From positions 6,448,001 to 6,512,000 of the forward strand of contig OZ059896.1 of assembly GCA_964057225.1 (NCBI GenBank): a DNA stretch of 64,000 nt, given 5' to 3'. The position numbers and the translations under genes are program-made. Shown in pieces: positions 13,589 through 18,760 of this stretch. Source of the DNA: Auanema rhodensis. Lineage: Eukaryota > Animalia > Nematoda. The notes beneath the pieces are model-generated. The model did no database searches. It worked only from the letters and a program-made list of their open reading frames with translations, and had not been told where the DNA came from. Numbering within the stretch: the first letter of the stretch is position 1; each line of letters opens with the position of its first letter.

Positions 13589-14267
13589 ATGGTGTATATT
13601 GATTCTAGTAAGTGTTTATATAATTTTAATCTTTATTTAATTATTCACTGATATCTATCCTTCTTAAATACTAATTAATATATATTTTGTAGTTCAATTT
13701 ATAATTTTTTAGAAGGAAACGTTCTTGAGAAGAAGGCGTCTATCTTCGCCTGCATTACTTCTTTTTTCGGCGTTTTCATTGCTTTGTAATTTTTTAATTT
13801 AATTACCGAAAATTAATGAGCTTACTATAGCTTCCTGTCTCTGTTTGGGTTGGACCGAAGCAATTCAACGCCTAACTCATATCGAGATCAACTTCGTAAC
13901 GGTGATGGTGGGACTTGGCCTGGAAGCGGGGGCCCTGGAGGACCTGGTCGCCGGGGAGATGGCAAGTTATTATCATTCTGCAATGCTTTTGGTTACTTGA
14001 AATAACAGCGTACTTTCTTAAAATGATTTCAACAGCCCTGCCGCCTAGACCTGCTTAAAGAATGTTTAAATTATCTACTTTTTCTTCTTCCAGGTCTACG
14101 TCGTCCAATAGGACGGCTTCCTAATAGTAGTGGAATGTCTTGTCCCCCAATGGCTGGGGGAGGATGAGGAAGGTTAGCTTTTTTTGTAAATCTTTTCATG
14201 CTATTATTCGTTTTTTTTTTCGAAAACGAGAATTATTTACAATTTAGTAACGTTTTCTTTTAGGTAA
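13589..14267 (+). CDS. SELENOK: Selenoprotein K (SELENOK/SelK), 101 aa, Sec encoded by TGA at 14165-14167
   Basis: Exons 13589-13607, 13713-13785, 13831-13961 (GC donor), 14094-14172 and 14264-14267 total 306 nt. Protein: MVYIDSKGNVLEKKASIFACITSFFGVFIAFFLSLFGLDRSNSTPNSYRDQLRNGDGGTWPGSGGPGGPGRRGDGLRRPIGRLPNSSGMSCPPMAGGG-U-GR*. It matches the SelK pattern: MVYI..G.VL start, one TM segment, Gly/Pro/Arg-rich tail, PPMAGG-U-GR end. A SECIS lies downstream. Confidence 0.93.
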
Positions 14268-14269
14268 AT

Positions 14270-14288
14270 GTCTGGGTCGCGCCCAGAC
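14270..14288 (+). promoter_or_regulatory. Proximal stem-loop immediately after the SelK stop (candidate UGA-recoding element)
   Basis: GTCTGGG-TCGCG-CCCAGAC forms a 7-bp GC-rich stem in otherwise AT-rich UTR, 11 nt after the UGA in the spliced mRNA. Confidence 0.6.
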
Positions 14289-14409
14289 TGCCTTCACTAA
14301 CAGGAACTCATACATATTAATCGCCCTTAATTTCCGTTTTTTCTGTTTAATCTAAATTATTTAATTACTTTTACCCCTGTACTTTTTCTTTTGTATGATT
14401 CCTGTTATG

Positions 14410-14520
14410 TTCTCATGAAGCCTATCAAGGGTAGGCGTGGCTTTGTGATGCGTACTCGCCAAATCCCATAGAGGAAGCGACTCGTTGATGTACATAGCAT
14501 ACCTTCGATAGCCATGGGAG
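14410..14520 (+). promoter_or_regulatory. SECIS element, form II, GUGA variant, with extended helix I
   Basis: GTGAT at 14445-14449 faces TGAT at 14486-14489 (tandem G.A quartet). Helix II is GCGTACTCGC/GCGACTCGT. Unpaired AAA at 14461-14463 follows the GA after a 12-nt spacer. Apical mini-stem TCC/GGA. Helix I pairs 14422-14439 with 14493-14511 and 14410-14417 with 14513-14520. Confidence 0.85.
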
Positions 14521-17500
14521 CTTCAGCTTCGGCTGCCAATCGAAATACCTTAGCGGGTTTTGTTGGTAATGAAAAACAACCTAAGATTCTTGTCCTCGGT
14601 ACGTTATATCTATTATGTCGTGTTTCATTCATTGTATCTTAAACAAATTATTGATATGTTAACGAGAGATGTTCAAGAAAATATCAATATGATTTATAGT
14701 AAAATGCCTTTCTTGCTGATATTGGTTCTATATTTTTTAATTAGTTGAAAATAAATCCATCTTCAATTGGATAAAGTTGTATAGAATTTTCTCGTTGGCT
14801 GGCTTTGAACATTTTCAATAAATTATAGCTACACTTCTTCAAGATAAATCTTTTCTTTGATAACTAATTACAGATTTCTCAGCAGCGAGAGTAGTAATTA
14901 TAAAAATCACGCGATTTTAACGATAATCTCTTTTATTAATTTTGAATATTTAGGTTGCATGGGCTCGGGAAAGACGTTGTTATGTCGTCAATTAATGTAT
15001 GTTTAAGGCTATATGATATAAGGCCTAATATAATTTTTTAAAATTTAAAATAAAATATTTTGAATAGGTGGAGGAAGTTTCCATTTATTATAATTATTAA
15101 AAAAAAGAAAGTAGATGATTTAAAAAAGAAAACAAAAGTTGAATCTTATTTCATAGAAAACTCATCGTTTTCTTTATTGTTACTTCTTAAAATTCCATTG
15201 TGTTTTGCTTTCTAAAGAATAAAATTTTTACTATAACAACTGAAAAAAAGTGGTTTTGAAAAATGGACAAATGTTTTACTTATGTAGTAATTATATGATA
15301 AATGTTTTTTCCGCAAAAAATAAAGTAATCTTTTTGTAATTTAGTAATTATTTTTTTTAGATAAAATAAATACCAATACTTGTCAAAAACTGAGTATTTC
15401 TCATACGGATTCTGATTAGGAAGATCCTTTAAAATTATGTAATAGATCAAAAACAAAATTATCAAAAAACAAAATAAATCTTAACATAACAGGAAATTTA
15501 TGAATTTTTTTTTATTATATGATTTAGCTTACATAAACAAAATATTATATTTATGTATTATGTATAGAGTTAAATAGTATCAAAATATTATTTATTTTTA
15601 TATGTTTTAAATATTAGATTATCAATTTCTTTAATAAATTTTAAAACAAAAAGATATTTAAACAGATCAAATGGCCTTTTTTATAATTTTACACCTCATT
15701 GTATAAATATGTAATTCATCACCTCGATGATTTTTAGTTCGTTTGTCTAATGTTTTGAATTGTATAATCTTTTGATTTTCTAACTATAATAACACTAAAA
15801 CAACATTGAAATTCTTAAGAAACAGAAAACATATAATGCATTTTAATTATTTAATTATTTAGGAGATATTCCCGAACTCAGACACCTGTTATTTCTTATT
15901 ATATACACACAGTGCAACATCACATCTTAGTCATTTATAGAGCTTTGGAAGATGTTTGTAAGCAACTCGAAGTTGATTATTCCAAGCGTAAAGTAAGCAA
16001 ATTACTTTGAAACTTAATTAATCACATCACTTTAGGAAGAATTTGATATAATAAATGATTTCCGACATAAGGAAACATTAAAAGAAAGCGTTGTTGAATC
16101 TCTTTTGAAGATTGCTTCATCAGGGCTTTACGAAGAATGTCAGACAAAGTCTCGTCGGTTGAAACTGCCTTATAACTATTCATAGTGAGTCTCTCGTTTG
16201 GTGTTAATTTTCTGTTTTTCCTCACTTTTCATTGAGTTTTCCAATTGGGTAAGCATATCTATATTTGTATGTTTACAAACTATTTTTTTATTTAGTTTAT
16301 AAACACTGATAAACAATAAAATAAAAACAAAATGAGTTGAAGCAATCATTATCAATTATTTGTTCGAAGTAACTTAAAGATAAAAAGATGATATTTCTGT
16401 TGCCATGGTAAGATAATCATAACATTGTTCAATGCAAAAGATGAAAAAAAAAGATGAAAAGAGTCATATCGTTAAGACAATCTGCCAAAAATTATTTTTT
16501 TTGAGTAAGCGAAGCTTGAAAAAACTGTCAGCACTTTGAATGTGGTTCCAAATCTTGATCTTTGTTTCTTCATGACGCAACAAATGTCAATTAATTTACT
16601 TTGTGCTGTTGTTAATACTAAATTAAAAGAAGATTTCAGTTTATTTTAAAAAGTACTGTATCTTTAAAGAAATCTTTCTTATGAAATCTCAACAAAAGGT
16701 TTATAGCTCAAAGATTTTCGTATTCAAAGAGAAACTTAAATGCCATAATTTGGTTTCAATGTTAGCGCCGTGAATATTTGATACAACTTAATCTATTCAT
16801 ATGAGATTATTTAAGATATCTCAGTATATTTCATGACATTATAATTTCTTCATATTTATGTGCTTTTATATATTTCAATATATCTCTTAATTATGTTTAT
16901 TCAGCTTCATTTCTTCATTGAAACGGATTTTGGATGAGAAATATATTCCAACCGAGAGTGATATTATCAACTCATATGCTCCAACTATAGGAATATCTGA
17001 TTATCCTATTCGTGTTGGTTCCGCACGCTTTCAGTAGGAATAGATTATTATGATCTGAAATCGTTTTTTTTTTTCAGTCTAGTAGAGTTACCAGGGCATC
17101 ATGTTTTTCGAAGACGTTGGCACGATTTTTTTAAATACACTATGGCTGTTTTCTTTTTAGTTGATTTAAGTGAACTTTGTGAACCTGAATTTTACAAGGT
17201 ATTATCTTGATTGGTATAAACTTTACATAATGATTTACAGGGATATTTGAAAGGGAAAACTCTACAAATATTTAAAGATTTACTGCCTAGTCCGTTACTA
17301 CGAAACGCTGGACTAATTGTTCTGTTTAACAAGAAAGATAGATTTCAAGAGTTGTCAATCAATGTTAATTGGTCAAACTTGGCTCAACACGTAAGAATAT
17401 TGTTTTTCTTCCTTTAAATCCTCAACAAACATCATTTTAGGTTCGTTCAAGTAACGAAGCTTTGTCATTCTATCGATCACAATTTGTAACATTACTTCCA

Positions 17501-18246: not shown

Positions 18247-18760
18247 GGCTCTTTTCTGTTATTTCCCCCCCCTTGCTAGGCTCCGCCTCTTCTGCCGAAA
18301 CGCGCGCAGTTTTACAACCTGGGGATGAGACTCTGAACCACCCTATAGACTCTAAACCACCTTCACGCACAACTTCCGAACTCCGGGGGTCTGGGGGGTA
18401 TCCCCCCAGTGGGGAGAAGTTATTTTAATAAAAATTATTAACCTATAAATCAGCTTTATTCTCTCTCCCTCGCATAAAAAGTACAATATCTTCAAAAATG
18501 GTATCAAATAGTCTTTTTTGATTGTTCCGTCTTCTCCACACAAAAACTTTTATAACCCTTTTAAAACATGTTAACTTTGTACTTCTTTCAATTGGGGTTA
18601 AACTTCTCCCCACTGGGGGGATACCCCCCAGACCCCCGGAGTTTGGAAGTTGTGCGTGAAGATGGTTTAGAGTCTATTCCGTCCCCAGGTTGTAAAACTG
18701 CGCGCGTTTCGGCAGAAGGGGCGGAGCCTACCGAGGGGGGGGAAATAACAGAAAAGAACC
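18247..18760. mobile_element. Non-autonomous DNA transposon (MITE), 514 bp, ~160-175-bp TIRs, 8-bp TSD; Merlin-like end structure
   Basis: 18247-18421 is a near-perfect inverted copy of 18600-18760. Termini are GG...CC. The direct repeat GAAGATAT flanks both sides (18239-18246 and 18761-18768). The AT-rich spacer has no transposase. Confidence 0.88.

What the first reader, a model, noticed from the sequence alone, without database searches (positions are those of the whole stretch)
14420..14512. Non-canonical GUGA-type SECIS with an unusually long lower helix and a competing hairpin
Seen: the core is G-UGAU/UGAU rather than A-UGA, with correct spacing to an apical AAA and a form-II mini-stem. 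Helix I extends roughly 25 bp with few mismatches. Its 5' strand can instead fold on itself (GCCTAT 14420-14425 with GTAGGC 14431-14436), which would free 14496-14511, where the candidate G-alpha acceptors lie. Established: the C. elegans trxr-1 SECIS also uses GUGA. Inference: GUGA may be a lineage-wide nematode trait, and the two folds could act as a conformational switch.
Basis: partly seen in the sequence, partly recalled or inferred. Interest (0 to 1): 0.7.

Follow-up and report, generated by a model that had tools for sequence, protein, structure and literature searches.

The report
Selenoprotein K SECIS, nematode G-type
This hairpin is the real signal that lets a roundworm read a stop codon as selenocysteine in its selenoprotein K gene; its odd G is the normal nematode form, its proposed switch is not conserved, but its long stem holds the next gene's start codon in eight worm species.

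Summary
The hairpin is real and is the SECIS of a selenoprotein K (SelK) gene (exons 13589-14267, Sec TGA 14165-14167). It ranks first of 2174 geometry-compatible sites in the window. Orthologous elements follow SelK in Auanema, Oesophagostomum, Haemonchus, Ostertagia, Heligmosomoides, Parelaphostrongylus and one spliced cDNA contig. A covariance model built from the six strongylid sequences alone puts its best window hit on the element. Its upper half has the same predicted geometry as the C. elegans trxr-1 SECIS used by Otero et al. 2014.

The G before UGA is not new: Otero et al. 2014 call it "typical of nematodes".

The lower helix has 26 bp only when extended to 14409-14521, and it then pairs the ATG (14514-14516) of the next gene, a G-alpha. 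That pairing occurs in all eight rhabditine sequences, with compensatory changes beside the AUG. The cDNA contig shows the SelK last exon running through G-alpha exon 1.

The competing hairpin exists (-7.7 kcal/mol, about 4% of the ensemble). It is no better than shuffles give and loses three of six pairs in Auanema, so the switch idea is not supported.

The scan noted this SECIS/start-codon overlap before, on this same stretch (s1-420608).

The parts
13589..13607 (+). SelK exon 1 (MVYIDS)
   Evidence: 92% DNA identity to Auanema L001 4001-4025.
13713..13785 (+). SelK exon 2 (transmembrane part)
   Evidence: Matches P0001 residues 8-14.
13831..13961 (+). SelK exon 3, probably ending at a GC donor (GCAAGT at 13962)
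   Evidence: 73% identical to P0001 residues 32-73, E 1.1e-6 against 1.84 billion proteins. Only the GC donor keeps the frame and the ..RGDG-F/LRRP.. junction seen in P0001.
14094..14172 (+). SelK exon 4, with the Sec codon TGA at 14165-14167
   Evidence: 86% identical to P0001 residues 78-98. Only Pfam hit is SelK_SelG, profile 69-86 of 86. TGA sits at the same place in 9 orthologues.
14264..14267 (+). Start of the last SelK exon: completes the Arg codon, then stop TAA 14265-14267
   Evidence: The same junction is spliced in cDNA contig L004.
14270..14288 (+). Proximal stem-loop just after the stop (8-bp stem, 3-nt loop)
   Evidence: -13.2 kcal/mol, nearly invariant in 8 rhabditine orthologues. 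ENA contig L007 has a different hairpin sequence at the same place.
14409..14439 (+). SECIS lower helix, 5' strand
   Evidence: 26 pairs with 14493-14521.
14420..14436 (+).
   Evidence: -7.7 kcal/mol. 3.9% of the ensemble. 3 of 6 pairs lost in Auanema.
14445..14449 (+). G, then the 5' half of the non-Watson-Crick quartet (UGAU)
   Evidence: Invariant GUGA in all orthologues.
14450..14485 (+). SECIS upper part: helix II (14450-59 with 14477-85), AAA 14461-63, mini-stem 14464-66 with 14473-75
   Evidence: Same predicted fold as the C. elegans trxr-1 SECIS. Only 2 changes against Auanema in 14429-14503, both at unpaired positions.
14486..14489 (+). 3' half of the quartet (UGAU)
   Evidence: Fits UGAN/KGAW (PMC3753652).
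14493..14521 (+). SECIS lower helix, 3' strand, running into the next gene's first three codons
14514..14598 (+). G-alpha exon 1; ATG 14514-14516 pairs with CAU 14414-14416
   Evidence: Later exons hit Pfam G-alpha at colinear profile positions, E 3e-7 to 3.5e-3. Annotated G-alpha genes start at the same ATG in Haemonchus and Parelaphostrongylus.
14568..14573 (+). First poly(A)-signal-like hexamer after the SelK stop (AATGAA); AATAAA follows at 14750 and 14817
   Evidence: no such hexamer lies between 14268 and 14567.

Best explanation
The hairpin 14409-14521 is the SECIS element of the selenoprotein K gene just upstream.

Shown here:
- The gene has an in-frame TGA (14165-14167) at the position where SelK orthologues also have TGA, followed by Gly-Arg-stop across a short intron.
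- About 186 nt further along the spliced mRNA lies a kink-turn-type core (G-UGAU / UGAU), an AAA triplet 11 nt after it, and two flanking helices.
- The element is kept in eight rhabditine sequences with compensatory changes.

The G before the quartet is the normal nematode state. The lower helix is long because it continues through the short spacer into the first codons of the next gene. The SelK 3' UTR therefore contains the G-alpha start codon, base-paired. This is shown for a strongylid cDNA contig and inferred for this genome.
For: SelK identity:
- Exon 3 finds a 98-aa Auanema protein that passes Pfam SelK_SelG at 2.1e-13.
- Exon 2 and exon 4 pieces match the same protein colinearly.
- The exon 4 piece alone hits only SelK_SelG, at the profile's end.
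- TGA is conserved in 9 orthologues plus Aphelenchoides.

SECIS evidence:
- Rank 1 of 2174 candidate sites in the window.
- Same predicted geometry as the C. elegans trxr-1 SECIS printed in PMC4114682.
- That 50-mer's best nhmmer hit in the window is 14444-14483, in register, though E = 20.
- Model R1, built from six strongylid orthologues without the window, has its top window hit at 14419-14516: 15.6 bits, E 0.07 over 128 kb.
- Rfam SECIS_1 aligns the Oesophagostomum orthologue at 29.7 bits, E 0.088.
- 93% of cells pair and 15 of 27 pairs change on both sides; 0 of 500 shuffles reach this (on a model-fitted alignment).
- This is the best-conserved stretch of the locus against Auanema: 83.5% over 230 nt.

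Overlap with G-alpha:
- The AUG is paired in all eight sequences, with compensatory changes at -1, -2 and -3.
- The spliced cDNA contig L004 runs through the SECIS, G-alpha exon 1 and more than 380 nt of its intron.
- No poly(A) hexamer lies before 14568.
Against: - Rfam SECIS_1 does not report the window's element even at E <= 10.
- R1's E-value is borderline and its calibration is rough.
- Free folding of the region is not exceptional (z = -0.78). The SECIS fold lies 2.2 kcal/mol above the unconstrained minimum. The energy model ignores the G.A quartet.
- The Sec machinery of this genome was not examined.
- The joined SelK protein model was never searched.
Confidence: 0.9

Rival explanations
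1. Dual-purpose stem. Besides serving as helix I of the SECIS, the basal part that pairs the G-alpha AUG (and, in the window and Auanema, an AG two bases before it) controls G-alpha expression. One version: it hides the start codon in SelK mRNAs. Another: SelK 3'-end formation and G-alpha mRNA formation become alternative fates of one primary transcript.
For: - AUG pairing occurs in all eight sequences, although the stem length differs by 10 nt per strand between lineages.
- There are compensatory changes at -1, -2 and -3 of the AUG.
- The basal extension is beyond genomic background, 0.06%.
- The cDNA contig shows that the two genes share RNA.
- SelK followed by G-alpha is kept in Auanema, Oesophagostomum, Haemonchus and Parelaphostrongylus.
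Against: - No RNA data show where G-alpha mRNA starts.
- The six strongylid sequences have no AG in the 14 nt before the AUG, so acceptor masking cannot be general.
- A helix I that simply uses whatever sequence lies next to it would also show compensatory change.
- The 3' strand is held fixed by coding (Met-Gly-Ala).
Confidence: 0.3
2. The 5' strand folds on itself (14420-25 with 14431-36), frees 14496-14511, and so toggles between SECIS function and trans-splicing of G-alpha.
For: - The hairpin exists at -7.7 kcal/mol.
- With it enforced, the best fold is only 1.6 kcal/mol above the minimum.
- Isolated strongylid 5' strands can also fold, at -9 to -13 kcal/mol, by a different pairing that takes 2-16% of the ensemble.
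Against: - It takes 3.9% of the ensemble, and 15% of shuffles fold as well.
- 3 of 6 pairs are lost in Auanema, where intra-strand pairing is 0.00.
- There is no homologous hairpin in strongylids.
- The lower duplex is -28.4 kcal/mol.
Confidence: 0.05
3. A chance inverted repeat or another kind of hairpin (microRNA precursor, transposon end) that only resembles a SECIS. The SelK TGA would then be a plain stop.
For: - No Rfam SECIS hit in the window.
- A loose SECIS descriptor of my own gives 8 hits in 128 kb.
Against: - The element is conserved in position, core, spacing and pairing across eight species.
- The sequence occurs only once in the window.
- There are no microRNA family hits here.
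- TGA followed by one or two codons and a stop is conserved in all orthologues.
Confidence: 0.02

Closest known systems
C. elegans trxr-1 SECIS (Buettner 1999; Taskov 2005; Otero 2014, PMC4114682)
   Same: - UU-GUGA-N core and UGAU on the 3' side.
- 11 nt to AAA.
- A 3-bp mini-stem with a 6-nt loop can form.
- Upper part is 36 nt here against 37 nt there.
   Different: - A different gene (SelK, not thioredoxin reductase).
- Helix II differs in sequence.
- The lower helix here is 26 bp and reaches into the next gene. The printed 50-mer has no lower helix to compare.
Rfam RF00031 SECIS_1, and the mammalian SelK SECIS (type II, AAR in an apical bulge; PMC6844570)
   Same: Quartet, A-rich bulge, mini-stem and 3' UTR location. 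The Oesophagostomum orthologue aligns over all 64 model positions.
   Different: - G replaces the consensus A.
- Helix II has an internal loop.
- The window's element scores below E = 10, and the best orthologue reaches 29.7 bits against a gathering score of 35.
GUGA_AA SECIS elements of green algae and the sponge Amphimedon (PMC2375036, PMC3473315)
   Same: G directly before the quartet as a lineage-wide habit.
   Different: Unrelated lineages. Those papers report no overlap with a neighbouring gene.
Nematode operons of the SL1 type, where the upstream 3' end and the downstream trans-splice site adjoin (from my own knowledge; not checked in a paper here)
   Same: Two same-strand genes with essentially no spacer. 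In the window and Auanema an AG lies 2 nt before the downstream AUG.
   Different: - Here the upstream mRNA runs past the downstream start codon (strongylid cDNA).
- Strongylids lack an AG near the AUG.
- Trans-splicing was not shown.

Membership tests
Eukaryotic SECIS element | Lies in the 3' UTR of a gene with an in-frame UGA at a position where homologues carry Sec | tested here: met
   SelK model, TGA 14165-67. The same TGA is present in 9 orthologues plus Aphelenchoides. The element starts 141 nt after the stop.
Eukaryotic SECIS element | Core quartet UGAN / KGAW able to form tandem G.A pairs (PMC3753652) | tested here: met
   UGAU 14446-49 and UGAU 14486-89. Invariant in the eight rhabditine sequences.
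Eukaryotic SECIS element | Unpaired A-rich motif in the apical loop or bulge at a fixed distance from the core | tested here: met
   AAA 14461-63, 11 nt after the core. The count is the same in C. elegans trxr-1 and in the rhabditine orthologues.
Eukaryotic SECIS element | Helices I and II flanking the core, kept by compensatory change | tested here: met
   93% of cells pair and 15 of 27 pairs change on both sides; 0 of 500 shuffles reach this, and slid partners give 28-52% (model-fitted alignment).
Eukaryotic SECIS element | Reaches the Rfam SECIS_1 gathering score (35 bits) | tested here: not met
   No hit at E <= 10 in the window. The Oesophagostomum orthologue scores 29.7 bits. SECISearch3 was not available.
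Eukaryotic SECIS element | A directly before the quartet (usual, not universal) | tested here: not met
   G14445. Reported as typical of nematodes (PMC4114682).
Eukaryotic SECIS element | Binds SBP2 and directs Sec insertion | not testable with these tools
   Needs selenium-75 labelling or a reporter assay.
Selenoprotein K (Pfam PF10961) | Passes the Pfam SelK_SelG threshold | tested here: inconclusive
   - The gene could only be scanned exon by exon. The exon 4 piece scores 12.7 bits, E 0.21, at profile positions 69-86.
- The Auanema orthologue P0001 scores 51.1 bits.
- P0001 is 73-86% identical to the window's exon pieces.
RNA conformational switch | Two mutually exclusive folds, both conserved and of comparable stability | tested here: not met
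   The alternative fold takes 3.9% of the ensemble and is not beyond shuffles. It is lost in Auanema.

The most novel reading that the evidence does not exclude
The basal stem of this SECIS is a conserved two-gene element. By pairing the G-alpha start codon inside the SelK 3' UTR, it couples the two genes. In one version, each primary transcript becomes either a SelK mRNA with an intact SECIS or a G-alpha mRNA. In another, SECIS-binding proteins set G-alpha translation. Either version would link selenium status to a G-protein signalling gene across rhabditine nematodes.
Probability: 0.2. Interest if true: 0.75.

Novelty: new variant of a known kind. Interest (0 to 1): 0.5.

Why it matters
The SECIS itself is an ordinary nematode-type element. 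It does show that Sec-containing SelK persists in Auanema-like rhabditids and in strongylids, unlike Caenorhabditis, whose SelK homologue has Cys (PMC4114682).

The unexpected part is the arrangement. The helix I of a recoding signal contains the start codon of the next gene. This is kept through a 10-nt change in stem length per strand and through compensatory substitutions. I found no paper describing such an overlap. It offers a simple, testable case of two genes sharing one RNA structure.

It also warns annotators that SelK is truncated at the TGA in public nematode gene sets, and that Rfam misses these elements.

Tried and rejected
- Rfam at gathering score on the window, at E <= 10 on 2 kb, and at E <= 10 on 126 nt: no SECIS hit.
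There is therefore no RNA evidence for this genome. The four candidate runs were never laid.
- Handling of 15025-15066: no query was drawn from those places afterwards. The model scans of the whole window and my local scripts did read the window as a target, including those places.
- Word search with SelK exon 3: nothing found.
- Protein atlas with the exon 4 piece: nothing usable.
- PDB search with the exon 4 piece: nothing.
- Exact look-ups of two window ORFs: not on record.
- My strict SECISearch-like descriptor missed the element by one terminal mismatch and gave 8 other hits, so I replaced it with an energy ranking.
- A model built from the C. elegans SECIS alone could not be made, because DNA alignment needs two sequences.
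- Taskov et al. 2005 is not held.
- One paper search was wasted on a loose setting.
- Rejected readings: microRNA precursor or repeat end (single copy; no family hit), and a plain stop at the TGA.

Full report
**What is there.** The stretch 14420-14512 lies on the + strand between two genes. Upstream is a five-exon gene (13589-14267) that reads MVYIDS..., then a hydrophobic segment, a Gly/Pro-rich region and ...SCPPMAGGG-TGA-Gly-Arg-stop. The Arg codon is split by a 91-nt intron. Downstream, ATG 14514-14516 opens an MGASAS... exon. Its later exons hit Pfam G-alpha at colinear profile positions, with E from 3e-7 to 3.5e-3.

- The exon 4 piece alone hits only Pfam SelK_SelG, at the last 18 profile positions (E 0.21 for the whole library).
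- The word search with exon 3 found nothing. That justified the exhaustive search, which returned a 98-aa protein, P0001, 73% identical to exon 3 (E 1.1e-6).
- P0001 comes from Auanema sp. JU1783 and passes SelK_SelG at 2.1e-13.
- The window's exon 2 and exon 4 pieces match P0001 colinearly. Its ...RGDG-FRRP... junction fits only a GC-AG intron at 13962.
- A word search with P0001 added SelK from Haemonchus, Parelaphostrongylus, Heligmosomoides, Ostertagia and Aphelenchoides, plus two unnamed contigs. Oesophagostomum came and was named.
- All carry TGA at the same position, followed by one or two codons and a stop.

The window therefore comes from a rhabditid close to, but distinct from, Auanema sp. 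JU1783.

**The hairpin as a SECIS.**
- The core is G14445-UGAU with UGAU 14486-89, which fits the UGAN/KGAW rule of SECISearch3 (PMC3753652).
- Eleven nucleotides separate the core from AAA 14461-63. A 3-bp mini-stem with a 6-nt loop follows.
- I scored every NUGAN...AA...NGAN site on both strands by upper-fold energy plus flank-duplex energy. This site ranks first of 2174: -34.8 against -25.9 kcal/mol for the next.
- The C. elegans trxr-1 SECIS printed by Otero et al. (PMC4114682) folds to almost the same dot-bracket. It has the same core, the same 11-nt spacing and the same mini-stem and loop sizes.
- The best nhmmer hit of that 50-mer in the window falls on 14444-14483, in register, but with E = 20, so it is not significant on its own.

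Rfam does not report the element at any threshold I tried. It does align the Oesophagostomum orthologue to SECIS_1 over the full model at 29.7 bits, against a gathering score of 35. The miss therefore reflects the G and an internal loop in helix II, not a different kind of RNA.

**Comparative evidence.** In Auanema, Oesophagostomum, Haemonchus, Ostertagia, Heligmosomoides, Parelaphostrongylus and a cDNA-like Logan contig, the best or second-best candidate after SelK is a G-UGA element at the same place.
- Against Auanema, this is the best-conserved part of the locus: 83.5% over 230 nt and 111 of 127 over the element.
- Only two changes fall in 14429-14503, and both are at unpaired positions.
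- A covariance model built from the six strongylid sequences alone has its top hit in the 128 kb of window at 14419-14516. The core, AAA and UGAU align in register at 15.6 bits, E 0.07.
- On the model-fitted alignment, 93% of cells pair and 15 of 27 pairs change on both sides. None of 500 shuffles reaches this, and slid partners give 28-52% paired. That alignment leans towards the structure.
- The gapless strongylid alignment gives 93.5% paired but little covariation, because those species are close.

**The long lower helix.** The helix continues to 14409-14417 with 14513-14521, giving 26 pairs and -28.4 kcal/mol. That extension is matched by only 0.06% of background pairs. It pairs the G-alpha AUG with CAU 14414-16.

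The same holds in all eight sequences folded on their own. The distance from the 3' core to the AUG is 24 nt in the window and Auanema, and 14 nt in strongylids. Anchored on the 3' strand, the positions before the AUG covary with their partners:
- at -1, C pairs with G, or A with U;
- at -2, C pairs with G, or U with A;
- at -3, the pairs are G-C, G-U or A-U.

**Shared RNA.** Contig L004 (SRR12213804) lacks all four SelK introns when compared with the Parelaphostrongylus genome. It then runs colinearly through the stop, the SECIS, G-alpha exon 1 and more than 380 nt of G-alpha intron 1. In that strongylid, therefore, the SelK 3' UTR contains the G-alpha start.

In the window, no poly(A)-signal hexamer occurs between the stop and 14568, which points the same way. 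How G-alpha mRNA is made is unknown. The window and Auanema have an AG two bases before the AUG, but strongylids have none within 14 nt.

**The competing hairpin.**
- It folds at -7.7 kcal/mol.
- With it enforced, the best fold of 14405-14525 is -34.4 against -36.0 kcal/mol, and it takes 3.9% of the ensemble.
- 15% of shuffles of the 5' strand fold as well.
- In Auanema three of its six pairs are broken and the 5' strand alone folds at -4.1 kcal/mol.
- Strongylid 5' strands can fold on themselves by an unrelated pairing, taking 2-16% of the ensemble.

**What is known.** G before the quartet is described as typical of nematodes (PMC4114682). It is also reported in zebrafish, green algae and a sponge (PMC2375036, PMC3473315). 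I found no paper on a SECIS that overlaps a downstream start codon.

**Limits.**
- I drew no query from those places afterwards.
- SECISearch3 was not available.
- The E-values of model R1 are rough.

**Verdict.** This is a genuine, conserved SelK SECIS of the known nematode G-type (confidence 0.9). The switch is unsupported (0.05). The conserved pairing of the next gene's start codon inside helix I is the one feature worth following up.

Noticed in passing
window 14270-14288: An 8-bp stem-loop sits two bases after the SelK stop, about 11 nt after the Sec UGA in the spliced mRNA. It is nearly invariant in eight rhabditine orthologues. ENA contig L007 has a different hairpin sequence at the same place. 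It resembles the proximal stem-loop (PSL) described for mammalian SelK and SelS (PMC6844570).
   Followed up: partly
window 13962-14093: SelK intron 3 seems to be a GC-AG intron (donor GCAAGT). The nearby GT donor breaks the frame, and the Auanema protein supports the GC junction.
   Followed up: partly
window 14173-14263; L005 8710-11108: An intron 5 nt after the Sec codon splits the last sense codon. It is kept in all rhabditine orthologues (2.4 kb in Parelaphostrongylus) and is spliced in cDNA contig L004. It is absent in Aphelenchoides.
   Followed up: partly
L007 521-575: An unnamed ENA contig with a Sec-type SelK scores 29 bits with model R1. On the 3' side of the core it reads UUAAU where UGAU is expected. 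The cause may be low coverage (2.9x) or a truly odd quartet.
   Followed up: no
L008 4085-4130: Aphelenchoides avenae (Tylenchina) has a SelK with in-frame TGA and a G-UGA SECIS candidate, with no G-alpha next to it. Plant-parasitic Tylenchina were reported to have lost Sec (PMC4114682).
   Followed up: no
window 18270-18420 and 18590-18750: Two GC-rich arms look like reverse complements of each other around an AT-rich centre, like a foldback or miniature transposon (seen by eye).
   Followed up: no
window 16891-17207: The G-alpha reads ...SYAPTIGI... and ...ELPGH... where canonical G-alpha has the catalytic Arg and the DVGGQ Gln. This agrees with the scan's note that both GTPase residues are missing. 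The canonical motifs are from my own knowledge.
   Followed up: no
L002-L006, L009, just 5' of the stem: All six strongylid sequences keep CCACGCC before the stem. It can pair either with G-alpha codons 2-3 or with GGCGGUG of the 5' strand.
   Followed up: partly
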